The notes below the pieces were generated by a model. That model made no database searches, was not told the origin of the DNA, and saw only the letters and a list, made by a program, of their open reading frames with translations. A stretch of DNA of 64,000 bases from Leucoraja ocellata (lineage: Eukaryota), in assembly GCA_036785375.1 (NCBI GenBank), contig JAWMAR010000894.1, positions 1 to 64,000 of the forward strand, given 5' to 3'. This document shows, one piece after another, positions 1,156-31,199 of this stretch; the first letter of the stretch is position 1, and the number at the start of each line of letters is the position of its first letter. The position numbers were made by a program, and so were the translations under genes.

Positions 1156-1156
<1 letters not shown>

Positions 1157-1186
<30 letters not shown>

Positions 1187-5300: not shown

Positions 5301-5370
5301 CAGGAATTCCAAACGCCGCCAGAATCGGATAGGCAATCTCCTTCATGTACAGAATCGGAGCCCGCTCCAT
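5301..5370 (-). CDS. First coding exon of a GPR139-like class A GPCR paralog (remaining exon not visible in window)
   Basis: 70-nt ATG exon encoding MERAPILYMKEIAYPILAAFGIP followed by G|GTAAAT donor. Homologous to 17725-17794. Confidence 0.7.
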
Positions 5371-8911: not shown

Positions 8912-9305
8912 GTTTGTATATTTGTCTACTATCTATATTGTTTTTGAACTGTGAATTGAAAATAAAAAACATTTGTATACTTGTCTATCTATATTGTGTT
9001 TGAACTGTGAATTGAAAATAAAAACCATTTGTATATGTCTATATATATTGTGTTTGAACTGTGAATTGAAAATAAAAACCATTTGAATATTTGTCTATCT
9101 ATACCGTGTTTGAACTGCGAATTTGAAAATAAAAACCATTTGTATATTTGTCTATCTATACTGTGTTTGAACTGTGAATTGAAAATAAAAACCATTTATA
9201 TATTTGTCTATCTACATTGTGTTTGAACTGTGAATTGAAAATAAAAACCATTTGTATATTTGTCTATCTATACTGTGTTTGAGCTGTGAAATGAAAATAA
9301 AAGCC
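8912..9305. repeat. AT-rich minisatellite, ~56-bp unit, about 7 copies (2 more at ~9778-9895)
   Basis: TTTGTATATTTGTCTATCTATATTGTGTTTGAACTGTGAATTGAAAATAAAAACCA repeated head to tail. Confidence 0.9.
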
Positions 9306-9569
9306 AGTTGTTATTGATGTAAAGCGTTTTGCATATTTTGTTTCTCTTGGGTTTTAAAATGGTTGCACCGGTTTTCAGGTAACTAAAGCATGATGTTTAT
9401 TGTGTTTGAAATGGTGATGTAAATTGAAATGCATTTGTTGCAACGGTTTCAGGCCAGTAATGCGCGAAAGAACCTTTTTTATTTCGATCAGACTGTGTTT
9501 AAATTTAAAATTGGCGGACATTTTGTGATTTTGGCGGTTTGAAGATGGCGGCGATGACGTCATTTCCGA

Positions 9570-9602
9570 CAAAGATCTTATAGCTTTGCTATAAGATCTT
9601 TG
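9570..9602. mobile_element. 33-bp collapsed TIR-only DNA element with 8-bp target duplication
   Basis: CAAAGATCTTATAGC-TTT-GCTATAAGATCTTTG flanked by ATTTCCGA on both sides. The same TIR begins a longer element at 10080. Confidence 0.7.
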
Positions 9603-10744
9603 ATTTCCGACGATCGGTAAGATGGCGGCGATGACGTCATTTCCGGCGAGCCGCGAAGTGAAAAAGTCACGGCTCTCTGAGCTGCAGCTCTGCTCCCAGG
9701 TGAGTGCTTTTTCACCCAATTGATATGTATGTTATTCACCATGCTCTGAAGTTTCTTGGAATTTTGTTGGAAAGAGTTTGTATATTTGTCTATCTATATT
9801 GTGTTTGAACTGTGAATTGAAAATGAAAAGCATTTTCAGTTGTATATTTGTCTATCTATATTGTGTTTGAACTGTGAATTGAAAATAAAACCATTTCTTT
9901 TTGTTATAAAGCGTTTTGCAAATTTGTTTCTCTTGGATTTTAAAATGGTTGCACCGGTTTTCAGTTAACTAAAGCATGATGTCTATTGTGTTTGAAATGG
10001 TGATGTAAATTGAAATGCATTTGATGCAACGTTTTCAGGCCAGTAATGCGCGAAAGAACCTTTTTATTTCGATCAGCACCAAAGATCTTATAGCAAAGCA
10101 AGACAGACTACTCCTGCTAAATTCAATGGACTGACGTGTAGTACGCTATGGAGGGGATCATGGGCATTTTTTCCACACCCATTTTAGCAACCTGAGCCTA
10201 CCTGACCCGACCCGACTCGCACTGTAATCAATGTTGCGGGGCACCAGTTTGTGTGGGTCAGATTCATAAATCTGTCAGTTCAAACTTCTTGTCAAGAATA
10301 AAATTTGATTCTGGTAGTTGTCTTTTTTAATGTTTTTTAAATCATTTCTTTTTAAATGGCTCACAAGCAGTGTTTGAGTTGATTTTGTAGTAACCGGAAC
10401 CGACCCGACTCGCAGGGTGATTGACAGGGGGGGGGGGGGGACTTTTTGTGCGTGATATAGGGTTAGATTCATAATTCTGTTAGTTCATAATTCTGTTGAT
10501 TCTTGTTAAAGAATAAAATGTTTATAAACACACATACATGACAATTATATAAATGTATATAACACACACAATTATATTTCTTCTAATCCAATAATGAACT
10601 TTATTTCAGACTAGACAAGGGACATTAAATAACAAACATTGTAAATAAGAAACATTGTAAACCTCCCTGCAACTTTATACACACTAGGCCTTATCCCCCC
10701 CGGCACTCTCTCGCCTGCCCCCTTACTCCAATGCCCACCCTCCT

Positions 10745-11090
10745 ATGCCCCTCTGCTCGCTGCCCCGGGCACCGCACTCTCTCTCCTCGCTGCCCCGGAC
10801 CCCGCACTCCCTCTCTTCGCTGCCCCGGACCGCGCAGTCCTTCTCCCCGCTGCCCCGCACTCTCTCTCCCCGCTGCCCCGGACCCCGCATTCCCTCTCCC
10901 CGCTGCCCCGGACCGCGCACTCCTTCTCCCCGCTGCCCCGCACTCCCTCTCCCCGCTGCCCCGGACCGCGCACTCCTTCTCCCCGCTGCCCCGCACTCTC
11001 TCTCCCCGCTGCCCCGGGCCCCGCACTCTCTCTCCTCGCTGCCCCGGACCCCGCACTCTCTCTCCCCGCTGCCCCGGGCCCCGCACAGAG
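10745..11090. repeat. GC-rich minisatellite (30-bp and 22-bp unit variants)
   Basis: CCCGCTGCCCCGGACCCCGCACTCTCTCTC repeats. Confidence 0.92.
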
Positions 11091-11998
11091 CCGCTCAAAC
11101 CATCTGAAGACATCTGTCACTTCCAGTATATGTTATTAATGCAAGAAACGCGTACTTTTCTATCTGTTAAAAACCGCCAAATTGTTGAATGTGTGCTCTG
11201 AAAATAAATGTGGAAATTGGGGTAAGTGTGAGAGACATGTACCCAACATTAGCATTCTAAACGTGAAATGAAATGAAGGTAAGGGGCTGCGAGAATTGAA
11301 GGGAAAACAGCAACTAAAGTGCTTGGTAAAGATTGGCTGTGCAGATATCGTAATTGAAAATATTGGAATGATCGTGTTTGCTCACTGCATTTCATCAACA
11401 GTAAGGCATTATTCGTGTTTTACTTGATTCCTTTAGTATTTAAAAATTCTCAGAAGTGATACATCTGGCTGTAAATTTTCCTTCAGATGCGCTTTCATTT
11501 TATACGTAAAAACCCACTTGAGAACCATGGGCGATTTATTTTTAAAAAATACAGCCAGATTTATCACATGAAACTTTTTAGATGCCAAAGGAATCAAGAA
11601 AAAAACACAAATAATGCTTTAGTGTTGATGAAATGTAGTGAGCAAACGGCCAATGTTCGCTAAGCACTCTTTGTTGTCCCTCCAGCTCTCTGAAGTAGGC
11701 TAAATATCTCATATGCTCATCCCAATTTCCATAATTATTTGCAGCGCAAAACTGGACATTTTCGGCGGGTTCTAACGGATCCGCTACGTTCAGGTTCCGA
11801 TTCAGATTCAGATTCAACTTTAATTGGCGTTGTCAGTGTACAGTACAGAGACAACGAAAATGGTTAGCATCTCCCTGGAAGATGGAGTTGGAAACGATGG
11901 TAAGTGCCTACCTGCAGTACATCGCGTGTAATCCATTTGGTGTAGCGTAGCAACAGTACGGGTCATGGGTCGTGACCCGACTGCCGTGAAACCTCCCT
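11090..11998 (-). mobile_element. THAP-derived foldback DNA element inside the Helitron (one terminus lost)
   Basis: Internal inverted repeat centred near 11510. TIR ...AAACCTCCCT at 11998. Matches 62217-63020. Confidence 0.7.
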
Positions 11999-13583
11999 CT
12001 GTGTATGCGTGTGTGTGTGAATATATATGTGTTCGTGTGAATATGTGTGTGTGTGTGAATATTTACGTGTGTGTGCGAATATGTGTGTGAGTGAATGTGT
12101 GTGTGTGTATGTGTGTGTGTGTGTGAATATGTGCGTGTGTCTATATGTATGTTTGTGTACATGTGTGTGTCTGAATATGTGAGTGAATATGTGCAAGCGA
12201 TTATATGTGTGTGTGCATATGTGTGTGAGTGCATGTGGATATATATGTGTGTGTGAAATAATATAATATTTTGTAGTTCAGAGCTTATTTGGTGAGTTTA
12301 ATAGTGCGTTGGCTGTCAGGAAGAAGCTGTTCCTCAACGGAGATGTTACAGTTTTCAGTTTACATAAGTCGGACGTGACTCCAGAAGTCGGCATCAGTCA
12401 GTCCACAAGCTGTGAGAGTCAGTCCAAAGGCCATGAGTTAATCCCAGGGCAGTGAGTCCACACGTCATGAGTAAATCGCTCACTGCCCCCTCTACTACAC
12501 TGACACCTCAAGACGCTGCCTTCTGCCTGGCTATAGGATGCACCCCCTACTGAAGCCGTCCACATCCTTTGCATGAGGACACCCCACCCCCTTCTCATCA
12601 GTTCACGACAACCCCCGCCTGAAGCTGCCCTTGGCTGCACGACATTTACCACCCATAGGGCAGTGTCTTGAGGTGGTGGATGAGTCTGTNNNNNNNNNNN
12701 NNNNNNNNNNNNNNNNNNNNNNNNNNNNNNNNNNNNNNNNNNNNNNNNNNNNNNNNNNNNNNNNNNNNNNNNNNNNNNNNNNNNNNNNNNNNNNNNNNNN
12801 NNNNNNNNNNNNNNNNNNNNNNNNNNNNNNNNNNNNNNNNNNNNNNGTGAGTGTCATTGAGTTTTTGTGTGCGTGAATGAGTCTGTTTGTGAATATGTGT
12901 ATGAGAGTGTGNNNNNNNNNNNNNNNNNNNNNNNNNNNNNNNNNNNNNNNNNNNNNNNNNNNNNNNNNNNNNNNNNNNNNNNNNNNNNNNNNNNNNNNNN
13001 NNNNNNNNNNNNNNNNNNNNNNNNNNNNNNNNNNNNNNNNNNATATATATGTGTGTGTGTGAAATGATAGTATTTCGTAGTTCAGAGCTTATTTGTTAAG
13101 TTTATTAGCGTGATGGCTGTCAGGAAGAAACTGTTCCTCAATGTAGATGTTACCGTTTTCAGTTTACAAAAGTCGGATGTGACTCCAGAAGTCGTGCATC
13201 AGTCAGTCCACAAGCCGTGAGAGTCAATCAGTCTAAAGGGCATGAGTCAATCCCAAGGCAGTGAGTGAGTCCACAGGTCATGAGTAAATCGCGCACTGCC
13301 CCCTCTCCTCCTCTGACATGCCCCACATCCACCTGGCAATAGATGAACCCCCAACTGAAGCCGCCCTCATCCCCTGCATGAGCCCCCCCCCCCCCCACAC
13401 ATTTCTCATCAGCTCACGAGAACCCCCATCTGAAGCTGTGCCCCTCCCTTGGCAGCACGATGTTTACCACCCCCCACCCCACCCTGACAGCTCTACCTCA
13501 AAAAAATGTGTTGCACAAAATCTTCAGTGTTCATTAACAACTGAAATTGTCTTTGGGCAGCTTTTTGAACATCATGTCAGGAA

Positions 13584-13845
13584 ATGTTATGTGATGTGGC
13601 TATTGCTGTAGTATCCTCTAGGATAGCAGCTACATTTCTGCCTGGTGGAAGAACGACACATTCTCGATTCAAGATACCCATCCAAGTGGCCGAGGATACA
13701 TTGTGCAACATCAAGAAGAACTCTAAGACGGCACATTTCACGAGGCAAGTGAAAGTCATTGTTTGGGATGAATGTCCAATGATTAGGAGAGAATGCTTTG
13801 AAGTTGTGGACTGAAGTGTTCAGCAACACCAAGCATTTTGGTGCC
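13584..13845 (+). pseudogene. Helitron Pif1 helicase fragment
   Basis: IAATFLPGGRTTHSRFKIPI..IVWDECPM, with a premature stop at 13814. Confidence 0.85.
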
Positions 13846-14784
13846 CCCCTGCCAGTACAGTGACTGAGCTGCCCGCCCAAAAACCCATTCCGCCCACAAA
13901 CTCCATACTAGCCCACTGGAAACCATTACCTTTGGCCCAGCATACTAGCTCAACAGAAATATGAAGGGAAATGTCAAAAGTTTCCTAAAGGATGGAACAT
14001 CGCCCAAGAATGTTGTCATTAATAGCGTGCTTCGTTGAATGATGATCTGAGATACTCTCAGATTTTCCTTCTTAAAATTTGACCGCTGACTTTCTCTATA
14101 TTAAAATTGTCTCTTTTTATCAACAGGAAATAGTCATCAAGAGGCTGTGAGCAGCAGAACACAACAAGACACAACAAGTAAAAACTTAATAAATCTCATC
14201 TTTAAAATTTAAATTGTTCTTATATTTTAAGAGTCATTCACATTTTAAACTTTAATAAAACCTTTTTGCGCTTTTAACGCTGTGTGTTCTTCATCACAAT
14301 AGAACCTAATAGGGAGGAATGGCTGCTCTGTGGGAGAGCCACTAAGAGTGCGTGGAGGGGGGAGATTGTTTGGAGACGCACTGAATGTGTGGGTGGGAGG
14401 GGAATGGCACGGAGCAGAGTGGGGTGGGGGTGAAGGTAGGTGGGATGACTGAGTGAACTGCCAGCGTACCAGGCGTGAGTGACTGCACTGCCAGCCCACG
14501 AGCCGTGAGTTAGTGAACTGCCAGCCCAATAATCCATTAAGTCCACACTCTCCCCCTTCTCTCTCTTACTGTCTGTAACCTGTTTTGAGCACAATTTCTG
14601 GCAGTTTCTCAGCCGCCAGCCTGCCAGGTCCGAGTGATTGTACTGCCAGGCCTCAGTGATTGAGCTGCCAGCCCAAAAATCCATTCGGCCCACAAACTCC
14701 ATACTAGCCGTCTGGAAATCAGTACCTTCGGCCCACAACGCTCATACTAGCGCAACAGAAAGCCCCCCCCCCCCCTCCCACTGG

Positions 14785-15369
14785 CCAAGTTTGCGGATGA
14801 CATGGCGCTGGGGAGAGGGGCGGGGGGGGGGTGTGGTAGCTGTCAGGAGGTTGCTAGGAGGCTGCAAGGTGACTTGAATAGGCTGGGTGAGTGGGCAAAT
14901 GCATGGCAGATGCAGTATAATGTAGATAAATGTGAGGTTATCCACTTTTGTGTACAAAAGTGCAAAAACAGGAAAGTAGACTATTATCTGAATGTTGGCC
15001 GATTAGGAAAAGGGGAGATGCAACGAGACGTGGGTGTCAAGATACATCAGTCATTAAAAGTAGGCATGCAGGTGCAGCAGGCAGTGAAGAAAGCAAATGG
15101 TATGTTAGCATTCATAGCAAAAGGATTTGAGTATAGCAGCAGGGAGGATCTACTGCAGTTGTACAGGGTCTTGGTGGCCAGTTCATTGGCTATATTTAAG
15201 ATGGTTAGATGTGGCCCTTGTGGCTAAATGTATCCGGGGGTAGGGAGAGAAAGCAGGTAAAGGATACTGAGTTAGATGATCAGCCATGATCATATTGATT
15301 GGGGGTGAAGACTCGAAGGGCCGAATGGCCTACTCCTGCACCTATTTTCTATGTTCTATGTTTCTATGT
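14785..15369 (+). mobile_element. CR1 LINE 3' part
   Basis: KFADD motif, RLQGDLNRLGEWANAWQMQYNVDKCEVIHF, KANGMLAFI, and a (TTCTATGT)n tail. Confidence 0.9.
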
Positions 15370-15811
15370 CTGTGTAAAACTGTGGAAGGGACAGGGTGTG
15401 AAATAAATGACAATTGGCTGAGATTCTGGGTGGACAGATGAGAGTGCGAAGGAGAACAGTGGGTGTGGGTTACCTGTAATGGGAAAATATGTCACTAATG
15501 CCATTGGGTTGTAAAGTCCAATACAACCAACGCTGAAACATGTGTCCGTGCAGGATGGAAGAGAGTAATAAGGTGAATAGAGCAATACGCATCCCGAGGA
15601 AGGTCAAAGGTAGGTCCAAGGAATTTGGAAGGGATAGAAACATAGAACAGCAAAATAGGTGTAGGAGTAGGCCATTTGACCCTTCGAGCTACATCTAACT
15701 CTCTCTTGAAAACATCCAGTGATTTGGCGTCCACTGCCTTCTGTGGCAGAGAATTCACAACTTTCTGAGTCAAAAACGTTGTATTGGCAGATATTGTCAA
15801 ATTGTTGATTC

Positions 15812-16187
15812 GTAGTTCCAGGATGTTTAGTCACTAAAACACTGAAATAGGCGGCAAAAAGGGATAATAACATTACAAAAAAAGCATGAATAAGGCATTT
15901 ATTGACAAAACAAGGCATCAAAAGGCATTTGTTTCCACCACCAAATATGGTTTAACATGATAATATAAAGGTATACGACATTAAATGACCAAAGTTATAT
16001 CTTGTGCATTACAACTACCTTTGAGAACTTTAGCTATGTTTTGTATTTCTTCAAGATCTTGGTTATCTGAAATCACTCTCACATTTTCCTGGTATGTCTT
16101 TGCCTACATCGCCAGGAACTTTACGAATATCGTCAGTTACTTTGTTGAAAACCTGCAGGTTATTCACTAATGTTTCGCCACGTTTTT
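15812..16187 (-). mobile_element. Probable hAT-like (hAT19/CGGBP-type) transposase 3' fragment
   Basis: Frameshifted peptide GETLVNNLQVFNKVTDDIRKVPGDVGKDI..CE../VISDNQDLEEIQNIAKVLKG resembles the region before the hAT dimerisation domain. GCCTATT/GCCTTTT subterminal motifs. Recognised from memory only. Confidence 0.4.
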
Positions 16188-16189
16188 CA

Positions 16190-16490
16190 AGGGAGGAAAA
16201 GAGGACATGACTTCAGAATTAAGGGACAGAAGTTTAGGGGTAATATGAGGGGGAACTTCTTTACTCAGAGAGTGGTAGCGGTGTGGAATGAGCTTCCAGT
16301 GGAAGTGGTGGAGGCAGGTTCATTGGTATCATTTAAAAATAAATTGGATAGGCATATGGATGAGAAGGGAATGGAGGGTTATGGTATGAGTGCAGGCAGG
16401 TGGGACTAAGGGTAAAAAAAAATGTTCGGCACGGACTTGTAGGGCCGAAATGGCCTGTTTCCGTGCTGTAATTGTTATATGGTTATATGG
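16190..16490 (+). mobile_element. CR1 LINE 3' fragment
   Basis: RGHDFRIKG.KFR..RGNFFTQRVVAVWNELP..FKNKLD with (GTTATATG)n tail. Confidence 0.88.
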
Positions 16491-17724
16491 AAGTGATAGC
16501 TTGTGGTAACTTTGCAACATTTGAGGCAATAAACACAAGATCTCGGTGGAAGGGCTTTATCTGCATTATTTCACTGACGATCCTGACTGCAACAGATTAT
16601 TCTTCAAAACAATTGACCATATATTTAGCAGCATAGTGGAGTACAACATGGAGCCATGTATCCCGCCGTCAAAACGGGCAGAGGAGGTAGCGGAATCTCG
16701 GGTGCCATTTCGTTGAACAACTGCACACGTGGCGATGCGTTGAGGAAGACATTGGAAACTAGGCGTTCGAATTTTGGAAACAAGCTACGTATGTGCTTGG
16801 TAATTCTATGAAGTCCTTGAGCTAAGCATGTCAAATGAAACATTTTGGGGAATAAAATCACAAACGTAAGAACATTCTCGTGTTTTATAACTTCTGGCCA
16901 AAGTACAGCAAGGGAAAATGTAAACAACTGAGCAATAGTTGAGCTGTTTGACTTCCGATGTCAACAAATATTCATTTGATGGTTGACTTGCCTGCAGTGT
17001 ACCGATGACCACATTGGTAACATATCCCACCACAGCATCTGTCGTCTCGTCTATTGAGATCCATATTTTGTTGCTGCAACTTCATCTCTATTTTTTTTGC
17101 GCACCAATGTTGAAGTTGCTGTCATGATTTTCCGTAATAATGACTCGATTGGTCTATGTTCCTCTGTGTATTTCTCTAAAAAAAAACCTCGGAGAGATTT
17201 GTTTTCCAATTTCCACAGTGGAATTCCCGCATCAATGAATGCGTTGCACAGATCACGCGAAAACTCAGATTTGCGACTGGAGCCAGCATTAAATGTAGTG
17301 AGGAGAAAGATTGGGTATTTCGCTTGGTTAGTCTACACCCCAACGGTATCAACATTGACTTCACTAACTCTTGTCTTCTCCCTCCTCCCCTTCCCCCTTC
17401 CCAGCTCTCCTTCCAGTCCTACTGTCTCCGCCTCTTCCTTTCATCCCCACCCCCTCTCCCCCCCCCCCCTCCCCCCCCACACACACACACAAATCAGTCT
17501 AATTTTGCATTGAGTATTCCCACACCAAGAAGTGGGGAATGGCTTCATTTGTCTGGAAATGTTTGTTAAAGGGTCCGTGACTAATGTAATTGCCCCGTGA
17601 CTCCCAGTGGCCACTGGAGGATTAGCGCGAGTATGAATGAGGAGAGGAGCAGCGCTCTACTCTGTTCTTGAGTTTGATCCACTGTGTTCTCCGGTTTGCT
17701 GCCGACACTGAGGCTCTTGCTTGA

Positions 17725-20382
17725 ATGCGGCGGGCTCCGATTCTGTACGTGAAGGAGATCGCTTATCCGATTATGGCGGCGTTTGGAATCCCCGGCAAGA
17801 CCGATCATTTTAGATTTAGGGTTATTATCTTCACGTGTACCGACGTAAAGCGAGGGCTATATTTTGCATGTTATCCAATCTGATCACAGAAACATTTACA
17901 TACATACAATCAAGTCAAACGTGTACAATCGGTAGCGAGATTAGATTTGAGGACGTAAAGGCGATTTTATCTGACAATCCTAGATACTTCGCAGGTAAGT
18001 GCATAACCGGCGCCATGTCCCAGTCATGTTGTTCCATGTGTAGCAAGGAACTGCACATGCTACTTTCGACCGAATATGATCACAAAATGCTGTAGTAACA
18101 CAGCGGGACAGGCAGCATCACTATAGAAAAGGAATGGGTGGCGTTTTGGGTCGAGACCCTTCTTCAGGTTCTGAATCATCTTCGGAAAAAGGGTCTCCAC
18201 TCGAATCGTCACCCATTCCTTCTCTCCAGAGAGTCTGCCTGTACCGCTGAGTTACTCCAGCATTTTGTATCTATCTTCATTGCGTACATATGAGTGAGAT
18301 GAGATTTAAGTCTCCTCAGGCTTAAGAACTATTTCGTTTACAAGTTGGCAGACAGACCACGGAGAGCATGAAGAAGTAAACTGAAGAAAGAAAACTTAAT
18401 TCAATCCCTGATTTCAATTTGGAGTTGTCATTTCCGCGGCAGTTAATAACACAACGAAATGATAATTTAATCGGCGAGAAGCAAACGACTTAAGATGGCG
18501 ACAAGATATATATTTGTAATGCTGGAAAAAAACACCTAACTGGTCACGCATCATGAGTGTGTAATGGAACAACATCGTTGTTTCAGTTCAGTGGCCATGT
18601 TAACACAGGAACAGACTCGCGTTACTGGTAGGTAACAGGCCGTTGTAAATTGTGCTGAGTATATTGGCCAGTGGCATGCTCTGGCAAGGTAGAAAAAAAA
18701 GAGGTTGGAGACAATGTGAAGTGATCATGTGGAGGGACTGGTGTTGGATCTGTTTGACTGGGAGTTTGTGGGTCGATGAGGAAGGCATAGACAGTGCAAC
18801 ATGTCTCTATTTTCATGATGAGTTTCTCATTGTGCAGCCCATATTATTTCCTTCATGGATCGGTGACGGTGTTATTGAAAGCCTCCCGCCAATAAATATT
18901 TTGGTATAATTCACTAAGTCCTTCAGTTTCGAAAGCCCAGAACATAGAGTAGTACAGCACAAGCACAGGCCCTTCAGCCCAGAATGTGCGTCAAACATAA
19001 TGCAAATCCCATCTCTTATCTAGCTGCACATAACCAATATGCCGCCATACACAGCATATCCATATGCTTATCCTTTAAAATCCCACTACCGTATGTGTGG
19101 CCTTCACGATCCACGCATTGATTTAGTTAAACATTGCGTTACAGCATTGAAACTGGCCCTTCAACCCACCCAGTTCATGCACACCCGTGCGCGCTATTTT
19201 AATATAATCCTACTTTGACATCCCCTCCCTAGAAGATAGGGACGATTTTCATGGAGACCAATACACCAACAAACGGTCAAATTTTTGAGAAGTGGGAGGA
19301 TGTCTGAGCATCAGGAGGAAACCCATGTGTCACAGGGAGTTCGTGCAAACTCCACTTAGCGAGCCCCCGAGACCAGGGTCGATTTCTGACGCAGATGCTG
19401 TGAGGCAGCGGATCCACCGGCTGCGTCTCTAAGCCGGTCTCTCCAATGAGGTTTAATCGCAGCCTTTGTCGTCTCTATTTCGTGTAATATAGAGGACAAT
19501 AGAGTCGGCGAAGTACCTGGTCATCCTCCTCTTCATTCTGTCTTCTGCAGCCAACGTGCTGACGGCTTCGATCTTGTACCGGGGAAAGTGCAGACTCTCC
19601 AGAGGTAACATGGTGGCGATGGCAATTTCCGACATGCTCGTCATCTTCTTTCACGTATTGCTCCAAGGAATCTACGTTCACTACACCCCTGACTCCTACC
19701 TGAGCCACACCACGGTGTGCCCTTCGTACGTATACATGCGCATCCTCACGCTGGACTATTCCGTCTGGTTAACCTTGTCCTTCACCTTTGACCGTTTCGT
19801 CAGCATTTGCTGCCCGAAGCTTAGACTCACGTATTGCACGGATAAGACGGCCGCCGTTGTCATTGGGTTCTTGTTGCCGCTGAGTTGTTTAAAGTACATC
19901 CCATTTTACTTCATGTACGAGCCACGATTCAACGTGGACAATGTGAACTGGGGTTGCCGGCCCAAACCCGCCTACTTCACTTCCATCTGGAGGGTGGCGT
20001 TTTCTTGGATGTTTAACATCTCTCTCTACTTACTCAATTTCGTTTTAACGCTGCTTCTGAACGGGCTGACGGTCAGGAACATCATAGCGGCCAGCAGGGT
20101 CCACCGGCGCTTGAAAGGACTGGAAGGCAAAGACTTCGAGGTGGAGAATCGGCGCAAACCCATCGTCTTACTCTTCACTGTGTCCGGCACCACCATATTA
20201 CTGCGGACGACGGGAGGGTGACTTTCATCTGTACCCGAATTACAATTAATTTTGGCGGCTCTGATCTCACAAGTCCCTCAAACATCTCAAATGAGGTGGG
20301 GGTCTTGCTCATTCGGCTCAGCTCCTGCGCCAACACGTGTATCTACGCAATGACGCAAAGCAGATTCAGGCAGGAACTTTAG
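17725..20382 (+). pseudogene. GPR139-like class A (rhodopsin family) GPCR pseudogene, two exons: 17725-17794 and 19551-20382
   Basis: Exon 1 MRRAPILYVKEIAYPIMAAFGIP splices in phase 1 to TTCTGCAG|CC giving ANVLTASILYRGKC..MAISDML..SVWLTLSFTFDRFVSICCPKL..YCT..LLLNGLTVR..ENRRK. Frameshift at ~20218, then LSSCANTCIYAMTQSRFRQEL*. The donor is GC rather than GT. Confidence 0.88.
19125..19430 (-). mobile_element. Degenerate HE1-like tRNA-derived SINE in the GPCR intron
   Basis: Similar to SINE copies at 31200-31510 and 39290-39600. Confidence 0.6.
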
Positions 20383-21696
20383 CAATTTACATTTTGACGG
20401 CGGGATACATGGCTCCATGTTGTACTCCACTATGCTGCTAAATATATGGTCAATTGTTTTGAAGAATAATCTGTTGCAGTCAGGATCGTCAGTGAAATAA
20501 TGCAGATAAAGCCCTTCCACCGAGATCTTGTGTTTATTGCCTCAAATGTTGCAAAGTTACCACAAGCTATCACTTCCATATAACCATATAACAATTACAG
20601 CACGGAAACAGGCCATTTCGGCCCTACAAGTCCGTGCCGAACATTTTTTTTTACCCTTAGTCCCACCTGCCTGCACTCATACCATAACCCTCCATTCCCT
20701 TCTCATCCATATGCCTATCCAATTTATTTTTAAATGATACCAATGAACCTGCCTCCACCACTTCCACTGGAAGCTCATTCCACACCGCTACCACTCTCTG
20801 AGTAAAGAAGTTCCCCCTCATATTACCCCTAAACTTCTGTCCCTTAATTCTGAAGTCATGTCCTCTTTTCCTCCCTTGAAAAACGTGGCGAAACATTAGT
20901 GAATAACCTGCAGGTTTTCAACAAAGTAACTGACGATATTCGTAAAGTTCCTGGCGATGTAGGCAAAGACATACCAGGAAAATGTGAGAGTGATTTCAGA
21001 TAACCAAGATCTTGAAGAAATACAAAACATAGCTAAAGTTCTCAAAGGTAGTTGTAATGCACAAGATATAACTTTGGTCATTTAATGTCGTATACCTTTA
21101 TATTATCATGTTAAACCATATTTGGTGGTGGAAACAAATGCCTTTTGATGCCTTGTTTTGTCAATAAATGCCTTATTCATGCTTTTTTTGTAATGTTATT
21201 ATCCCTTTTTGCCGCCTATTTCAGTGTTTTAGTGACTAAACATCCTGGAACTACGAATCAACAATTTGACAATATCTGCCAATACAACGTTTTTGACTCA
21301 GAAAGTTGTGAATTCTCTGCCACAGAAGGCAGTGGACGCCAAATCACTGGATGTTTTCAAGAGAGAGTTAGATGTAGCTCGAAGGGTCAAATGGCCTACT
21401 CCTACACCTATTTTGCTGTTCTATGTTTCTATCCCTTCCAAATTCCTTGGACCTACCTTTGACCTTCCTCGGGATGCGTATTGCTCTATTCACCTTATTA
21501 CTCTCTTCCATCCTGCACGGACACATGTTTCAGCGTTGGTTGTATTGGACTTTACAACCCAATGGCATTAGTGACATATTTTCCCATTACAGGTAACCCA
21601 CACCCACTGTTCTCCTTCGCACTCTCATCTGTCCACCCAGAATCTCAGCCAATTGTCATTTATTTCACACCCTGTCCCTTCCACAGTTTTACACAG

Positions 21697-22283
21697 ACAT
21701 AGAAACATAGAACATAGAAAATAGGTGCAGGAGTAGGCCATTCGGCCCTTCGAGTCTTCACCCCCAATCAATATGATCATGGCTGATCATCTAACTCAGT
21801 ATCCTTTACCTGCTTTCTCTCCCTACCCCCGGATACATTTAGCCACAAGGGCCACATCTAACCATCTTAAATATAGCCAATGAACTGGCCACCAAGACCC
21901 TGTACAACTGCAGTAGATCCTCCCTGCTGCTATACTCAAATCCTTTTGCTATGAATGCTAACATACCATTCGCTTTCTTCACTGCCTGCTGCACCTGCAT
22001 GCCTACTTTTAATGACTGATGTATCTTGACACCCACGTCTCGTTGCATCTCCCCTTTTCCTAATCGGCCAACATTCAGATAATAGTCTACTTTCCTGTTT
22101 TTGCACTTTTGTACACAAAAGTGGATAACCTCACATTTATCTACATTATACTGCATCTGCCATGCATTTGCCCACTCACCCAGCCTATTCAAGTCACCTT
22201 GCAGCCTCCTAGCATCCCCCTGACAGCTACCACACCCCCCCCCCCCGCCCCTCTCCCCAGCGCCATGTCATCCGCAAACTTGG
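21697..22283 (-). mobile_element. CR1 LINE 3' part (mirror of 14785-15369)
   Basis: ORF 21839-22192 and (CATAGAAA)n tail. Confidence 0.9.
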
Positions 22284-25200
22284 CCAGTGGGAGGGGGGGG
22301 GGGGGCTTTATGTTGCGCTAGTATGAGCGTTGTGGGCCGAAGGTACTGATTTCCAGACGGCTAGTATGGAGTTTGTGGGCCAAATGGATTTTTGGGCTGG
22401 CAGCTCAATCACTGAGGCCTGGCAGTACAATGACTCGGACCTGGCAGGCTGGCGGCTGAGAAACTGCCAGAAATTGTGCTCAAAACAGGTTACAGACAGT
22501 AAGAGAGAGAAGGGGGAGAGTGTGGACTTAATGGATTATTGGGCTGGCAGTTCACTAACTCACGGCTCGTGGGCTGGCAGTGCAGTCACTCACGCCTGGT
22601 ACGCTGGCAGTTCACTCAGTCATCCCACCTACCTTCACCCCCACCCCACTCTGCTCCATGCCATTCCCCTCCCACCCACACATTCAGTGCGTCTCCAAAC
22701 AATCTCCCCCCCTCCACGCACTCTTAGTGGCTCTCCCACAGAGCAGCCATTCCTCCCTATTAGGTTCTATTGTGATGAAGAACACACAGCGTTAAAAGCG
22801 CAAAAAGGTTTTATTAAAGTTTAAAATGTGAATGACTCTTAAAATATAAGAACAATTTAAATTTTAAAGATGAGATTTATTAAGTTTTTACTTGTTGTGT
22901 CTTGTTGTGTTCTGCTGCTCACAGCCTCTTGATGACTATTTCCTGTTGATAAAAAGAGACAATTTTAATATAGAGAAAGTCAGCGGTCAAATTTTAAGAA
23001 GGAAAATCTGAGAGTATCTCAGATCATCATTCAACGAAGCACGCTATTAATGACAACATTCTTGGGCGATGTTCCATCCTTTAGGAAACTTTTGACATTT
23101 CCCTTCATATTTCTGTTGAGCTAGTATGCTGGGCCAAAGGTAATGGTTTCCAGTGGGCTAGTATGGAGTTTGTGGGCGGAATGGGTTTTTGGGCGGGCAG
23201 CTCAGTCACTGTACTGGCAGGGGGGCACCAAAATGCTTGGTGTTGCTGAACACTTCAGTCCACAACTTCAAAGCATTCACCCCTAATCATTGGACATTCA
23301 TCCCAAACAATGACTTTCACTTGCCTCGTGAAATGTGCCGTCTTAGAGTTCTTCTTGATGTTGCACAATGTATCCTCGGCCACTTGGATGGGTATCTTGA
23401 ATCGAGAATGTGTCGTTCTTCCACCAGGCAGAAATGTAGCTGCTATCCTAGAGGATACTACAGCAATAGCCACATCACATAACATTTCCTGACATGATGT
23501 TCAAAAAGCTGCCCAAAGACAATTTCAGTTGTTAATGAACACTGAAGATTTTGTGCAACACATTTTTTTGAGGTAGAGCTGTCAGGGTGGGGTGGGGGGT
23601 GGTAAACATCGTGCTGCCAAGGGTGGGGCACAGCTTCAGATGGGGGTTCTCGTGAGCTGATGAGAAATGTGTGGGGGGGGGGGGGGGCTCATGCAGGGGA
23701 TGAGGGCGGCTTCAGTTGGGGGTTCATCTATTGCCAGGTGGATGTGGGGCATGTCAGAGGAGGAGAGGGGGCAGTGCGCGATTTACTCATGACCTGTGGA
23801 CTCACTCACTGCCTTGGGATTGACTCATGCCCTTTAGACTGATTGACTCTCACGGCTTGTGGACTGACTGATGCACGACTTCTGGAGTCACATCCGACTT
23901 TTGTAAACTGAAAACGGTAACATCTACATTGAGGAACAGTTTCTTCCTGACAGCCATCACGCTAATAAACTTAACAAATAAGCTCTGAACTACGAAATAC
24001 TATCATTTCACACACACACATATATATTCACACGCACTAACACATATATTCATACACACACACACATTCACTCACACACACGTACACACACACATATTCA
24101 CACACACACTCAGGAACACCCACATACACACACGCACATATGCACACACTCACATTCTCACACATATTCACACTCTCACACACATTCTCATACACATATT
24201 CACAAACAGACTCATTCACGCACACAAAAANNNNNNNNNNNNNNNNNNNNNNNNNNNNNNNNNNNNNNNNNNNNNNNNNNNNNNNNNNNNNNNNNNNNNN
24301 NNNNNNNNNNNNNNNNNNNNNNNNNNNNNNNNNNNNNNNNNNNNNNNNNNNNNNNNNNNNNNNNNNNNNNNNNNNNNNNNNACAGACTCATCCACCACCT
24401 CAAGACACTGCCCTATGGGTGGTAAATGTCGTGCAGCCAAGGGCAGCTTCAGGCGGGGGTTGTCGTGAACTGATGAGAAGGGGCGGGGTGTCCTCATGCA
24501 AAGGATGTGGACGGCTTCAGTAGGGGGTGCATCCTATAGCCAGGCGGAAGGCAGCGTCTTGAGGTGTCAGTGTAGTAGAGGGGGCAGTGAGCGATTTACT
24601 CATGACGTGTGGACTCACTGCCCTGGGATTAACTCATGGCCTTTGGACTGACTCTCACAGCTTGTGGACTGACTGATGCCGACTTCTGGAGTCACGTCCG
24701 ACTTATGTAAACTGAAAACTGTAACATCTCCGTTGAGGAACAGCTTCTTCCTGACAGCCAACGCACTATTAAACTCACCAAATAAGCTCTGAACTACAAA
24801 ATATTATATTATTTCACACACACATATATATCCACATGCACTCACACACATATGCACACACACATATAATCGCTCGCACATATTCACTCACATATTCAGA
24901 CACACACATGTACACAAACATACATATAGACACACGCACATATTCACACACACACACACATACACACACACACATTCACTCACACACATATTCGCACACA
25001 CGCACGTAAATATTCACACACACACACATATTCACACGAACACATATATATTCACACACACACGCATACACAGAGGGAGGTTTCACGGCAGTCGGGTCAC
25101 GACCCATGACCCGTACTGTTGCTACGCTACACCAAATGGATTACACGCGATGTACTGCAGGTAGGCACTTACCATCGTTTCCAACTCCATCTTCCAGGGA

Positions 25201-28200
25201 GATGCTAACCATTTTCGTTGTCTCTGTACTGTACACTGACAACGCCAATTAAAGTTGAATCTGAATCTGAATCGGAACCTGAACGTAGCGGATCCGTTAG
25301 AACCCGCCGAAAATGTCCAGTTTTGCGCTGCAAATAATTATGGAAATTGGGATGAGCATATGAGATATTTAGCCTACTTCAGAGAGCTGGAGGGACAACA
25401 AAGAGTGCTTAGCGAACATTGGCCGTTTGCTCACTACATTTCATCAACACTAAAGCATTATTTGTGTTTTTTTCTTGATTCCTTTGGCATCTAAAAAGTT
25501 TCATGTGATAAATCTGGCTGTATTTTTTAAAAATAAATCGCCCATGGTTCTCAAGTGGGTTTTTACGTATAAAATGAAAGCGCATCTGAAGGAAAATTTA
25601 CAGCCAGATGTATCACTTCTGAGAATTTTTAAATACTAAAGGAATCAAGTAAAACACGAATAATGCCTTACTGTTGATGAAATGCAGTGAGCAAACACGA
25701 TCATTCCAATATTTTCAATTACGATATCTGCACAGCCAATCTTTACCAAGCACTTTAGTTGCTGTTTTCCCTTCAATTCTCGCAGCCCCTTACCTTCATT
25801 TCATTTCACGTTTAGAATTCTAATGTTGGGTACATGTCTCTCACACTTACCCCAATTTCCACATTTATTTTCAGAGCACACATTCAACAATTTGGCGGTT
25901 TTTAACAGATAGAAAAGTACGCGTTTCTTGCATTAATAACATATACTGGAAGTGACAGATGTCTTCAGATGGTTTGAGCGGCTCTGTGCGGGGCCCGGGG
26001 CAGCGGGGAGAGAGAGTGCGGGGTCCGGGGCAGCGAGGAGAGAGAGTGCGGGGCCCGGGGCAGCGGGGAGAGAGAGTGCGGGGCAGCGGGGAGAAGGAGT
26101 GCGCGGTCCGGGGCAGCGGGGAGAGGGAATGCGGGGTCCGGGGCAGCGGGGAGAGAGAGTGCGGGGCAGCGGGGAGAAGGACTGCGCGGTCCGGGGCAGC
26201 GAAGAGAGGGAGTGCGGGGTCCGGGGCAGCGAGGAGAGAGAGTGCGGTGCCCGGGGCAGCGAGCAGAGGGGCATAGGAGGGTGGACATTAGAGTAAGGGG
26301 GCATGCGAGAGAGTGCCGGGGGGGATAAGGCCTAGTGTGTGTAAAGTTGCAGGGAGGTTTACAATGTTTCTTATTTACAATGTTTGTTATTTAATGTCCC
26401 TTGTCTAGTCTGAAATAAAGTTCATTATTGGATTAGAAGAAATATAATTGTGTGTGTTATATACATTTATATAATTGTCATGTATGTGTGTTTATAAACA
26501 TTTTATTCTTTAACAAGAATCAACAGAATTATGAACTAACAGAATTATGAATCTAACCCTATATCACGCACAAAAAGTCCCCCCCCCCCCCCCCTGTCAA
26601 TCACCCTGCGAGTCGGGTCGGTTCCGGTTACTACAAAATCAACTCAAACACTGCTTGTGAGCCATTTAAAAAGAAATGATTTAAAAAAACATTAAAAAAG
26701 ACAACTACCAGAATCAAATTTTATTCTTGACAAGAAGTTTGAACTGACAGATTTATGAATCTGACCCACACAAACTGGTGCCCCGCAACATTGATTACAG
26801 TGCGAGTCGGGTCGGGTCAGGTAGGCTCAGGTTGCTAAAATGGGTGTGGAAAAAATGCCCATGATCCCCTCCATAGCGTACTACACGTCAGTCCATTGAA
26901 TTTAGTAGGAGTAGTCTGTCTTGCTTTGCTATAAGATCTTTGGTGCTGATCGAAATAAAAAGGTTCTTTCGCGCATTACTGGCCTGAAAACGTTGCATCA
27001 AATGCATTTCAATTTACATCACCATTTCAAACACAATAGACATCATGCTTTAGTTAACTGAAAACCGGTGCAACCATTTTAAAATCCAAGAGAAACAAAT
27101 TTGCAAAACGCTTTATAACAAAAAGAAATGGTTTTATTTTCAATTCACAGTTCAAACACAATATAGATAGACAAATATACAACTGAAAATGCTTTTCATT
27201 TTCAATTCACAGTTCAAACACAATATAGATAGACAAATATACAAACTCTTTCCAACAAAATTCCAAGAAACTTCAGAGCATGGTGAATAACATACATATC
27301 AATTGGGTGAAAAAGCACTCACCTGGGAGCAGAGCTGCAGCTCAGAGAGCCGTGACTTTTTCACTTCGTGGCTCGCCGGAAATGACGTAATCGCCGCCAT
27401 CTTACCGATCGTCGGAAATCACAAAATGTCCGCCAATTTTAAATTTAAACACAGTCTGATCGAAATAAAAAAAAGGTTCTTTCGCGCATTACTGGCCTGA
27501 AACCGTTGCAACAAATGCATTTCAATTTACATCACCATTTCAAACACAATAAACATCATGCTTTAGTTACCTGAAAACCGGTGCAACCATTTTAAAACCC
27601 AAGAGAAACAAAATATGCAAAACGCTTTACATCAATAACAACTGGCTTTTATTTTCATTTCACAGCTCAAACACAGTATAGATAGACAAATATACAAATG
27701 GTTTTTATTTTCAATTCACAGTTCAAACACAATGTAGATAGACAAATATATAAATGGTTTTTATTTTCAATTCACAGTTCAAACACAGTATAGATAGACA
27801 AATATACAAATGGTTTTTATTTTCAAATTCGCAGTTCAAACACGGTATAGATAGACAAATATTCAAATGGTTTTTATTTTCAATTCACAGTTCAAACACA
27901 ATATATATAGACATATACAAATGGTTTTTATTTTCAATTCACAGTTCAAACACAATATAGATAGACAAGTATACAAATGTTTTTTATTTTCAATTCACAG
28001 TTCAAAAACAATATAGATAGTAGACAAATATACAAACTCTTTCCAACAAAATTCCAAGAAACTTCAGAGCATGGTGAATAACGTACATATCAATTGGGTG
28101 AAAAAGCACTCACCTGGGAGCAGAGCTGCAGCTCAGAGAACCGCGACCCTTCCACTTCGTGGCCGGGAAGAAAGTGATTGAAGCGGGTCGCTACCGGGTT

Positions 28201-28436
28201 TTATAGCCCCTCCCTCCCCTGCCGCCATCGGGGGCTGCAGAGAGAATGGGGAATGATGTAACAACATTAATATCTCGGTCATATTTCATCGAGAGGACAA
28301 ATCCTCGGCACACATGCGGCAGAGGGGTGCTCTGAGGGAGGTGGCCAAAAATGACGGCCGTAGGTGGCGGCGTTCTCTCGGAAATCGCAGCACAGATCGG
28401 GAAAAGCGGTCAAGAACTGAGTTTTAGTAATGTAGA
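22281..28436 (-). mobile_element. Composite Helitron (mirror of 8513-14787)
   Basis: Contains the Pif1 fragment 23225-23485, foldback element 25074-25985 and minisatellites 25985-26275 and 27645-28040. Confidence 0.75.
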
Positions 28437-29371
28437 TAACTGGGGTCCCAGCACTGAGCCATGCGGTACCCCACTAGTCATTGCCTGTCATTGTGAAAAG
28501 GATCCGTTTACTCCTACTCTTTGCTTCCTGTCTGCAAGCCAGTTCATTATCCACATAAATACTGAACCCCCAATACCGTGTGCTTTAAGTTTGTATACTA
28601 ATCTCTTATGTGGGACCTTGTCGAAAGGCTTGTGAAAGTCCAGATATAACACTGCCACCGGTTATCCCTTATCCACTCTACAATTTACATCCTCGAAAAA
28701 TTCTATAAGATTTGTCAGACATGATTTACCTTTCATGAATCTATGCTGACGTTGTCCAATGATTTCACCACTTTCCAAATGTGCTGCTATCCCATCTTTC
28801 ATAACTGATTATAGCAGTTTCCCCACTGCCTATGGTAGACTAACTGGTCTGTGATTCCCCGTTTTCTTCTCCCTCCCTTTTTAAAAAGTGGGGTTACATT
28901 AGCTACCCTCCAATCTTCAGGAACTACTCCAGAACCCAAAGTGTTTTGAAAAATTATCACTAATGCATCCACTATTTCTGGAGCTACTTCCTTAAGTACT
29001 CTGGGATGCAGCCTATCTGGCCTTGGGGATGCATCTGCCTTTAATCCATTCAATTTACCTAACACCACTTCCTGGCTAACCTGGATTTCACTCAGTTCCT
29101 CCATCTCATTTGACCCGCGATCCCCTGCTATTTCCGGTAGATTATTTATGTCTTCCTTAGTGAAGACAGAACCAAAGTAGTTATTGAATTGGCCTGCCAT
29201 GTCCTTGTTCCCCATGACCAATTCACCTGTTTCTGACTGCAAAGGACCTACATTTGTTTTAACTAATTGTTTTCTCTTCACATATCTATAAAAAGTTTTG
29301 CGTTCAGTTTTTATGTTCCCTGTCAGTTTTGTTTCATAATCAATTTTCCCTTTCCTAATTGCCTTTTGTTC
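28437..29371 (-). mobile_element. CR1 LINE ORF2 fragment (mirror of 7578-8512)
   Basis: ORF 28799-29281. Confidence 0.9.
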
Positions 29372-31199
29372 TGGATTTGGATGGAAATGAGTAAACGAAT
29401 TATTAGTTCAATGGAGCGGCGGGTGCAGGAGGCGATATCTGGCTGATTTGTACTCTCCGAAATATCGGGTAGTTATTTTACAGCGGTCAGAATATACAGG
29501 CTGGGGTATGTGGGACCGGTGCATGGAGTGCGTGAAGAAGATCAAAGTGCACGACAGCGTTTCGCATGGAGATGCCAGGGTTAGTTATTGGCCTCTGGTG
29601 CATTTGTTTATCTCAGTTTCATCTCCACATGCTTAACACGCGGTCTGTAGGCAGTTTAACATGGAGCCGTTTTTTGGAGACCGACGTTTTCCGTAAAGGT
29701 TAGATCTTATCTTCTCTCTGTCGCTGAGATATCTTCCCTGGCCGACCTGTTACCAATGTTGGCTTCATTTCCAGTCAATGGTTGAGTTTTGGTCGCTTTT
29801 GTTTTCTGCTGCGGGTTGACTACTTGACATCAAGCCACAGGAAGTGGTGTCGCGTCACGGCTGCGGTCTTCAAGCTATGTTGACGATTCGCAGAAACATT
29901 TGGAGAGGAGGACGAGATCAAGCGTTTGAACCCTGAACCGCCGTCAGAGACTCGCGTCCTCTTTAGAACCCCTAACCCCACACCCCCTCCTTCCCCTTCC
30001 AGCCGGAGCGCTCGTCCACTCTCTCCGACATTTCTCTCCCGTCGAAGACCACGCTCTCTCCTTTCTCTCAAGAGGCAGGGTGGGTGCCAAGTCCACCATT
30101 GGCGGGCTGCTAACGGATATATTCTTACTTTAACCCGTTCAATAGTTTCCACGTTAATTCTGGGAGATAACGTGTTAGAGTTTGCTTCATTGCTTCAGCC
30201 ACAAGTTGATGAACTGTCTGCTCGTCGTGTGCTCTTTGATACATTTGCGGCATCAACAGTGGGAGAGACTCCCGTTTTCTCAAACCACCAACATACGAAA
30301 CAGGTCAACACACTGAGGTCGTCAAAATACTTTAAAAGGCTACTCGTAATATTGCGCCTATTTGCCATTAAACACCAATCCTTCGCAGATCCATTTCATC
30401 TGGATTATAGACCATAGTGGCATTTCATCCCTGAAGCACCATCGACGTCCTCCTCATAGCAAACTTCAGTTCGGTTCTCCAGCCTCATTTTCCATTTGTG
30501 GCCATGCGCGTGCAATTCCAAATATGTGCACGGTTTTCCCCACATCTGTCTGAACATCTTTGGCCTGGTTTACATTCATGCCACAGACATAAGCTCCCCT
30601 CAAGTCCTTCGGTTTGCTGGCCCATCGTGAACCTAATCAGTTCAGGGTTGGAAGAAATACCGCCCACCATGTCTGCGCCGATTATGATGTCAGCGCCTCT
30701 GGTCTTATCTGGGTGCATACGATGTGTGCACCTCCATTGTCTGCCTGTACACGTGCGGTTAAATCCCTCCTAAATGTTGCCATGGGATCTACATCTACCA
30801 ACTGCCCAAGGCGCGCATCCAGGCACATAAAGAATAACTGTACTGGAAAATCTAATTTAAACTTTCCTCCTTTCACTTTATAACCTTTCCATTTAGCAAT
30901 TTACATTTCATCATATTGCTTATGCATAAAATGCCCTGGCCTTCTCCTTCATTATACTTGCCTGGAAACGTCCATGGCTTTCTTGTTTAAATTATTTCCT
31001 GCTTTCTTTATGTTCGGCTGCCTACCGTTTCCTAACTTTACATTTGGTTCTTCTTTGATTAAGGTTACAATATTTCTTATCATCCAAGGTTTACAATCTC
31101 GCCATCATGTCGTCATTCCAACTAGGCTCTAAACTCTGATTATCTGGCTTTCAAAGTATTCCCACCAATTAGACGAGGATACATTAAAAAGGCCAGTTC

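What the first reader, a model, noticed from the sequence alone, without database searches (positions are those of the whole stretch)
20378..20394. 17-nt junction signature: the far end of the arm is copied in front of its near end
Seen: TTTAGCAATTTACATTT occurs at 20378-20394, just before the right arm, and again at 30892-30908, the distal end of the arm (mirrored at 5778-5794). It supplies the TAG that truncates the GPCR. Inference: the two ends of a ~10.5 kb segment were joined through TTT microhomology, as expected from an excised circular DNA that reintegrated nearby in inverted orientation, or from a multi-step replication template switch. An alternative is a true 17-bp target-site duplication, with the left arm copied later from the right arm.
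Basis: partly seen in the sequence, partly recalled or inferred. Interest (0 to 1): 0.8.

Follow-up and report, generated by a model that had tools for sequence, protein, structure and literature searches.

The report
Repair scar at an inverted duplication
A 17-letter string in front of the right copy of a 10.5 kb inverted duplication in a skate genome repeats that copy's far end; it looks like an ordinary scar left when a copying enzyme switched templates, not a transposon footprint.

Summary
The 17-mer lies at 20378-20394, 30892-30908 and, reversed, 5778-5794 (0.03 expected by chance). The arms are 5776-16674 and 20392-30910, 99.64% alike, and each has changes of its own. The 17-mer's last TTT is also the first three letters of the right arm, so the junction is 14 extra letters plus 3 shared.

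A hAT-type transposase pseudogene reads straight across the left arm's inner edge. Left arm and spacer are therefore anciently contiguous. The right arm's inner junction is the new one.

That junction cuts off a GPR139-like receptor after ...RFRQEL. All 46 relatives whose tail I could locate (of 50) continue for 13 or more residues. The missing tail is nowhere in the window.

A read contig from a public run crosses the junction.

A plain target-site duplication is refuted. A unit-length circle does not fit. The best reading is a templated insertion made by serial, microhomology-primed template switches during a fold-back-type inverted duplication with a 3.7 kb spacer. This is a known kind of scar and of modest interest.

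The scan's notes list nothing like this on other DNA.

The parts
5776..16674 (+). Left arm (L) of the inverted duplication, 10,899 nt. Its inner edge is anciently contiguous with the spacer.
   Evidence: arm limits and identity; transposase frame crosses 16674|16675
5778..5794 (-). 17-mer at the far (outer) end of the left arm, followed outward by the 2 shared letters at 5776-5777
16069..17398 (-). hAT-type (DUF659) transposase pseudogene that crosses the left arm's inner edge. It is interrupted by a very abundant short repeat at about 16300-16490.
   Evidence: 636 relatives at E<=1e-3; P0051 aa 26-140 on 16957-16667, aa 141-207 on 16668-16486, aa 206-247 on 16194-16069; P0062 from 17398; the motif LPPxPVLT-RWGTW straddles the edge; Pfam; depth
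16675..20377 (.). Single-copy spacer between the arms, 3,703 nt
17725..17797 (+). GPR139-like receptor, exon 1 (MRRAPILYVKEI...)
19550..20381 (+). GPR139-like receptor, exon 2. One G is missing near 20215. The frame ends at TAG 20379-20381, about 20 codons short of its relatives.
20378..20391 (+). 14-nt templated insertion, an exact copy of 30892-30905 (= reverse complement of 5781-5794)
20392..20394 (+). TTT shared by the end of the 17-mer and the start of the right arm (exit microhomology)
20392..30910 (-). Right arm (R), 10,519 nt, the inverted copy. Its inner end begins in the middle of the transposase frame.
30892..30908 (+). 17-mer at the far end of the right arm. The arm homology ends 2 nt later, at 30910.

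Best explanation
The 17-mer at 20378-20394 is a junction scar, and it was made in the same event that made the inverted duplication.

Proposed sequence of events:
1. A DNA end arose inside the 3' end of a GPR139-like receptor gene, at about 20377-20379.
2. Its 3' strand primed on the far end of a 10.9 kb segment lying upstream and copied 14-17 letters.
3. It came off and re-paired through the TTT it had just made with the AAAA at the segment's near end (16671-16674).
4. It then copied the whole segment in reverse orientation.
5. The new copy was joined to the DNA that now follows 30910. The receptor's last ~20 codons were lost.

Both copying tracts stop at the same place on the template, 5778 and 5776. 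This suggests the template strand physically ended there, at a break, a nick or a fork, so that both were run-offs. If so, the 2-nt difference is a clipped flap.

What is shown: the exact repeat, the 3-nt overlap, that the junction is derived, the loss of the tail, and that real reads hold the junction.

What is inferred: the order of the switches, the run-off idea and the enzymes. Candidates are break-induced or fork-restart replication (MMBIR/FoSTeS) or polymerase-theta-type end joining.
For: 1. The 17-mer occurs only at the three arm-end positions (0.03 expected).
2. The arm homology starts at 20392, inside the 17-mer. This gives 14 inserted letters plus 3 of microhomology.
3. Relatives of the transposase read ...LPPxPVLT-RWGTW.... 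The window reads LPPLPVLT, with codons straddling 16675|16674, and then RRDTWLHVVLHYA inside the left arm. Collinear tblastn segments confirm this: P0051 aa 140 to 141, P0054 aa 308 to 312. The right arm holds only the part from aa 141 (P0051) or 312 (P0054) onward. So L|spacer is ancestral and spacer|R is new.
4. The receptor is 89-91% identical to P0001 up to ...RFRQE, and then stops. All 46 relatives with a locatable tail, of 50, go on for 13 or more residues. tblastn finds no such tail elsewhere in the 64 kb.
5. Contig record 24 of run X19 (282 nt, 3 differences, no gaps) lies on 20216-20497. It spans the receptor, the 17-mer and 103 nt of the arm. It carries G at 20287, where the window has T, so it is not simply the assembled haplotype.
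6. The arms differ at 37 sites. Polarised by an older copy, 6 changes are R-derived, 3 are L-derived and 1 is unresolved, of 10. This is a real duplication with some age.
7. The layout matches human fold-back inverted duplications (PMC3907307, passages read). There the spacer is 766-70,466 bp with a median of 3,428. Thirteen of 18 junctions have 2-8 bp of microhomology. Five have insertions, mostly copied from within 1 kb of a breakpoint.
Against: - The ancestral order at the outer ends (5775|5776 and 30910|30911) is therefore unknown.
- Microhomology at the entry into the 17-mer is 0 nt, unless the receptor's own Leu codon supplies one or two T. That is untestable here.
- The template of the insertion lies 10.5-14.6 kb from the junction along the DNA. 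That is further than the 'usually within 1 kb' of the human series, although it lies next to the other new junction.
- Read support is one short contig from a run of coded identity. It could be the same animal or a paralogous copy.
- The run-off idea rests on two end points 2 nt apart and has no independent test.
Confidence: 0.65

Rival explanations
1. Circular intermediate. The 10.9 kb segment was excised or copied as a circle closed through the TTT/AAA overlap. It was then either opened and re-inserted nearby in reverse, or copied for slightly more than one turn.
For: The string ...ACATTT|TGACGG... at 20389-20399 reads exactly as a head-to-tail joint of the segment's two ends with a 3-nt overlap. 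A copy of one turn plus 14-17 nt would give the observed right arm.
Against: - A reopened circle gives a permuted copy of unit length. The right arm is unpermuted, runs from the first to the last letter of the segment, and has 14 extra letters.
- A copy that overshoots one 10.9 kb turn by only 14-17 nt, or a staggered cut placed exactly beside the circle joint, is a coincidence of roughly 1 in several hundred.
- The 2 letters CA shared beyond the 17-mer belong to the left flank and would not be on such a circle. The chance of that match is 1 in 16.
- The left copy is intact, so nothing was excised.
Confidence: 0.12
2. Same scar, different large event. The spacer was inverted and the 10.5 kb segment next to it was duplicated at the same time. 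This would be an inversion flanked by inverted duplicates, made by staggered breaks or by template switches. The right arm would then be the original and the left arm the copy.
For: - The layout arm-spacer-inverted arm is what that model yields (PMC1885836, passages read; 17 of 29 Drosophila inversions).
- The transposase continuity survives in this model too, because spacer and left arm would have moved as one block.
- Undoing the inversion would place the receptor and the exon-1 relic at 5296-5437 in the same orientation.
Against: - The model predicts the receptor's missing tail on the minus strand just left of 5776. The in-frame peptide there scores 19 against 46 relatives' tails, equal to the mean of 20,000 random peptides from the window; 52% score as high.
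- For a gene 90% identical to P0001, the tail should be obvious. An extra deletion of 60 nt or more must therefore be assumed.
- Staggered nicks 10.5 kb apart are long for that model.
Confidence: 0.25
3. Plain 17-bp target-site duplication. The 10.5 kb segment inserted as a unit, and the left arm was copied later from the right arm.
For: Two direct 17-mers flank 20395-30891.
Against: - The left arm is not a later drop-in. One transposase frame crosses its inner edge.
- The left arm carries the 17-mer, so the 17-mer belongs to the segment and not to the target.
- The receptor's relatives do not have these letters after RQE(L), and the rest of the tail does not resume after 30910.
Confidence: 0.02
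4. Assembly artefact. A mis-joined or haplotype-duplicated inverted copy, with the 17-mer as an assembler stitch.
For: - Near-identical 10 kb inverted repeats are hard to assemble.
- N runs lie inside both arms.
- Only one listed short contig crosses the junction.
Against: - The X19 contig crosses the junction with 161 nt on one side and 103 nt on the other.
- The arms differ by 37 substitutions and 13 indels, and both arms carry derived changes.
- The inner 1,579 nt of the arms are identical up to a sharp edge inside a coding frame. That is not the look of two haplotypes collapsed or doubled.
Confidence: 0.05

Closest known systems
Fold-back inverted duplications with a single-copy spacer (human germline series, PMC3907307; passages read)
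   Same: - An inverted copy separated from the original by a spacer of a few kb: 3.7 kb here, median 3.4 kb there.
- 2-8 bp of microhomology, or a short insertion copied from the rearranged chromosome, at the spacer-to-inverted-copy junction.
- Sequence beyond the break is lost.
   Different: - Here the copy is only 10.5 kb and interstitial, joined back to chromosomal DNA. There it runs on to a dicentric or a terminal deletion.
- The insertion's template is the far end of the copied segment, 10.5 kb away, rather than within 1 kb.
- This one is fixed or segregating in a wild elasmobranch, not found in a patient.
Templated insertions from serial template switching: MMBIR/FoSTeS, synthesis-dependent MMEJ, polymerase theta (PMC2621351, PMC2943611, PMC4912351, PMC11724301; search listings and abstract openings only)
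   Same: A short exact copy of nearby sequence sits at a new junction. Its exit uses a few bases of microhomology created by the copied tract itself.
   Different: No enzyme can be named from sequence. The tract and the long copy end at the same template position, a detail I did not see described in the passages read. I did not search for it specifically.
Inversions flanked by inverted duplications, staggered-break model (PMC1885836; passages read)
   Same: Two inverted copies of formerly unique sequence flank a short segment.
   Different: Whether the spacer is inverted relative to the ancestor could not be tested. Only one side is duplicated.
Target-site duplication of a mobile element
   Same: Direct repeats of 17 bp stand at both ends of a 10.5 kb stretch.
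   Different: The repeat belongs to the segment itself. The segment is contiguous with its other neighbour through a shared reading frame. The interrupted gene does not resume.

Membership tests
Target-site duplication of an insertion | Identical direct repeats immediately flank the inserted stretch | tested here: met
   20378-20394 and 30892-30908
Target-site duplication of an insertion | The repeat comes from the target: other copies of the inserted stretch lack it, and the interrupted sequence resumes after the second repeat | tested here: not met
   The left arm carries the 17-mer at its far end. Relatives' tails differ from the 17-mer's reading, and no tail follows 30910.
Target-site duplication of an insertion | The stretch is a discrete unit, not anciently contiguous with its neighbours at the other copy | tested here: not met
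   A hAT-type transposase frame crosses 16674|16675
Fold-back / template-switch inverted duplication | An inverted copy separated from the original by a single-copy spacer of about 0.8-70 kb | tested here: met
   The spacer 16675-20377 is 3,703 nt. The range is from PMC3907307.
Fold-back / template-switch inverted duplication | Microhomology and/or a short templated insertion at the spacer-to-inverted-copy junction | tested here: met
   14-nt exact copy plus a TTT overlap
Fold-back / template-switch inverted duplication | The spacer-to-inverted-copy junction is derived, and the original-to-spacer adjacency is ancestral | tested here: met
   The receptor is truncated at the junction. The transposase frame is continuous at the other edge.
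Fold-back / template-switch inverted duplication | An ancestral allele or outgroup has one copy only | not testable with these tools
Re-inserted circular DNA | A head-to-tail joint of the segment's two ends is present | tested here: met
   ...ACATTT|TGACGG... at 20389-20399
Re-inserted circular DNA | The copy is a circular permutation of exactly one unit | tested here: not met
   The right arm is collinear with the left arm end to end and has 14 extra letters
Inversion flanked by inverted duplicates | The segment between the duplicates is inverted relative to the ancestor | tested here: inconclusive
   The only internal test, for the receptor tail left of 5776, gave a score no better than random. 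No outgroup DNA was available.
GPR139-like rhodopsin-class receptor (the interrupted gene) | A 7tm_1 domain and close identity to annotated members | tested here: met
   Pfam 7tm_1 scores 49.2 bits against a cut-off of 30.5. Identity is 89% to a Leucoraja erinacea protein that its source names 'probable G-protein coupled receptor 139'.
hAT-superfamily transposase (the gene that crosses the left edge) | Relatives carry hAT-type domains | tested here: met
   DUF659 is above its cut-off in 4 of 5 relatives scanned. P0051 scores 33.6 against a cut-off of 34.7, but has Dimer_Tnp_hAT at 21.5 against 21.4. The window's own four pieces gave no Pfam hit.

The most novel reading that the evidence does not exclude
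Two features stand out: the two arms end at exactly the same letter, and the short tract stops 2 nt from that same letter. On this reading they record run-off copying on a free DNA molecule. A 14.6 kb piece (segment plus spacer) would have been broken out of the chromosome or looped into a circle. It folded back on itself twice to build the second arm and was then put back. That would be germline re-insertion of an extrachromosomal intermediate in a vertebrate.
Probability: 0.12. Interest if true: 0.55.

Novelty: new member of a known kind. Interest (0 to 1): 0.3.

Why it matters
It is a clean, base-resolved natural example, in a cartilaginous fish, of how an inverted segmental duplication forms. 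It shows one ancestral edge proved by a reading frame, one new edge with a 14-nt templated insertion and 3-nt microhomology, and the loss of a receptor gene's tail.

Such scars are the main evidence for replication-based or polymerase-theta-type rearrangement in germlines, and most documented cases are human or fly. It adds a data point and does not open a new question.

Its practical value is in annotation. The receptor at 17725-20381 is a truncated copy, and the 10.5 kb arms are a recent duplicate, not a mobile element with a footprint.

Tried and rejected
- Orthologous DNA. I asked look-up of encoding contigs for the loci of P0001 and P0002.
- Receptor tail left of 5776. The in-frame reading there looked like some relatives' tails (AFTRL against AFTHL). 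Its best local score of 19 equals the null mean, and 52% of 20,000 random window peptides score as high. I rejected it as evidence.
- Repeat continuity across the outer edges. blastn with 9-letter words and nhmmer found no other copy in the window spanning 5775|5776 or 30910|30911. The open frames that span them have only 9 residues on the arm side. No conclusion.
- Pfam on the window's own transposase pieces: no hit for 4 of 4. The family was named through relatives instead.
- Asymmetry of changes between the arms, as a sign of error-prone synthesis: 6 against 3 substitutions, too few to say.
- Earlier notes of the scan. Nothing under 'inverted duplication palindrome arm junction'. The other look-ups gave only unrelated notes.
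- Supplements of the two papers were not opened. Figure S1 and Table S1 of PMC3907307 hold the junction sequences and could show whether an insertion copied from the far end of the duplicated segment has been seen before.
Full report
**What is there**

The 17-mer TTTAGCAATTTACATTT occurs three times in the 64 kb and nowhere else, even with two mismatches allowed. The sites are 5778-5794 on the minus strand, 20378-20394 and 30892-30908. The chance expectation is 0.03.

The three sites are the ends of a large inverted duplication:
- The left arm is 5776-16674.
- The right arm is 20392-30910.
- Between them lies a 3.7 kb single-copy spacer.

A full alignment gives 37 substitutions in 10,195 compared positions (99.64%) and 13 indels of 1 to 272 nt. 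There are no differences in the inner 1,579 nt or the outer 632 nt. The arms hold N runs, which I left alone.

**The junction, letter by letter**

The right arm opens with TTTTGACGG, the mirror of CCGTCAAAA at 16666-16674. The 17-mer ends with TTT at 20392-20394. So 14 letters (20378-20391) are extra and 3 are shared with the arm.

At the far end, the two arms agree for 2 letters (CA) past the 17-mer and then part.

**Which edge is old and which is new**

The spacer's left part and the adjoining end of the left arm encode, on the minus strand, one decayed transposase.
- A search with the piece 16628-16960 found 636 relatives at E<=1e-3, the best at 5e-24.
- Four of five relatives scanned carry Pfam DUF659 above its cut-off. 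The fifth carries the hAT dimerisation domain.
- Local tblastn places P0051 residues 26-140 on 16957-16667 and residues 141-207 on 16668-16486. It places P0054 residues 64-308 on 17332-16667 and residues 312-375 on 16659-16486.
- The relatives read LPPxPVLT-RWGTW. The window reads LPPLPVLT, with the codons lying across 16675|16674, and then RRDTWLHVVLHYA in the next frame.

One gene therefore runs through the left arm's inner edge, and that adjacency is ancestral. The right arm contains only the part from residue 141 (P0051) or 312 (P0054) onward. It is preceded by the 14 letters and an unrelated gene.

**The interrupted gene**

The spacer's right part is a two-exon GPR139-like receptor: exon 1 at 17725-17797 and exon 2 at 19550-20381.
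- It scores 49.2 bits on 7tm_1 and is 89% identical to a Leucoraja erinacea protein. The genome is therefore that of a skate or a close relative.
- It lacks one G of a G-run near 20215. Contigs with the extra G occur in all four runs laid. In run X18, only 7.81 of a total depth of 34.8 carries the extra G.
- Its frame ends ...RFRQEL*, and the TAG lies inside the 17-mer.

Of 50 relatives, my pattern located the tail in 46, and all 46 continue for 13 or more residues (K-N-G-I-K-S-L...). The four that were dropped have either a longer tail or no anchor motif. None stops after QEL.

tblastn with eight tails found nothing beyond 20379, apart from a distant paralogue at 35.9 kb and a weak relic inside the arms (E 0.075). 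The tail was lost at the junction.

**Is it real DNA?**

Contig record 24 of X19 is 282 nt long with 3 differences and no gap. It lies on 20216-20497 and so bridges the receptor, the 17-mer and 103 nt of the arm. It has G at 20287, where the window has T, as do all four runs.

Polarised by an older 92-96% copy at 844-3885, the arm substitutions are 6 right-derived, 3 left-derived and 1 unresolved. An assembler stitch is unlikely. Still, support from one short contig of a coded run is thin.

**Mechanism**

*Target-site duplication is out.* The repeat belongs to the segment, because the left arm carries it. The segment is anciently joined to the spacer. The gene does not resume after the second repeat.

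*A reopened circle is a poor fit.* It predicts a permuted, unit-length copy. The right arm is collinear with the left arm from end to end and is 14 letters longer than one unit.

*What fits is serial template switching.* A 3' end in the receptor's tail copied the last 14-17 letters of the segment. It let go, re-paired by TTT at the segment's near end, and copied all 10.9 kb.

Both tracts end at 5778 and 5776. I read this as a physical end of the template, with a 2-nt flap clipped at the re-pairing. That part is inference.

The overall layout matches the human fold-back series: a spacer with a median of 3,428 bp, 2-8 bp of microhomology at 13 of 18 junctions, and insertions at five (PMC3907307, passages). 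For MMBIR, synthesis-dependent MMEJ and polymerase theta I saw only search listings.

**What stays open**

I could not tell whether the segment was simply copied to the right of the receptor with a small deletion, or whether the spacer was inverted while the segment was duplicated (the staggered-break or dup-inversion type; PMC1885836, passages).
- The second model predicts the receptor's tail just left of 5776. The peptide there is no better than random. This speaks mildly against that model.
- No repeat in the window crosses either outer edge.
- Orthologous DNA was out of reach.

**Verdict**

The thing is a known kind of rearrangement scar: well preserved and nicely anchored by two broken genes, but not surprising.

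Noticed in passing
window 16069-17398 (-): A decayed hAT-type (DUF659) transposase gene. It is split by a very abundant short repeat at about 16300-16490. Contig depth there is 1e5-1e6, against tens for unique DNA.
   Followed up: partly
window 5286-5579 (-) against 17455-17809 (+): A second GPR139-like exon 1 with in-frame stops at 5296-5437 (minus strand), plus about 140 nt upstream as far as a poly-G run. It is paralogous to the spacer's exon 1 region (nhmmer E 9e-29) and lies head to head with it. No matching exon 2 was found to its left.
   Followed up: partly
window 844-3885 against 11689-14772 and 22296-25383: An older third copy, 92-96% identical, of an inner part of the arms. I used the copy only as an outgroup.
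   Followed up: partly
window 6746-7023 against 29936-29941: The left arm has about 272-278 nt where the right arm has 6 letters. Those 6 letters partly repeat the neighbouring letters. This may be a deletion with a small filler in the right arm.
   Followed up: no
window 16490-16674 (run X1, record 1): A 185-nt contig of another organism's run has 11 differences and a depth of 45, against about 20-27 for the other listed X1 contigs. It ends exactly at the arm's inner edge. This hints that the same two-copy edge exists in a related skate. If so, the palindrome is older than its 0.36% arm divergence suggests, and gene conversion would be keeping the arms alike.
   Followed up: no
window 20231-20374 (runs X18 record 16 and X20 record 32): A 406-nt contig matches the receptor at about 92% up to 20374 and then runs on for 263 nt unlike the window. 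This is probably a paralogue with an intact tail.
   Followed up: no
window 11484-11567 (+) and 25505-25588 (-): A weak receptor-tail-like reading inside both arms (11 of 28 residues identical to P0001's tail, E 0.075). It may be a relic of another family member.
   Followed up: no
window 35575-35926 (+): Another, distant GPR139-like fragment covering TM6-TM7 (42-47% identical to P0001). Earlier notes of the scan describe large clusters of this family elsewhere in the genome.
   Followed up: no
window 8873-9332 / 27617-28076 and 10717-11101 / 25966-26289: Tandem arrays inside the arms, with units of about 56 nt and of 23/30 nt. Two of the larger arm differences (75 and 53 nt) lie in or beside them.
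   Followed up: no
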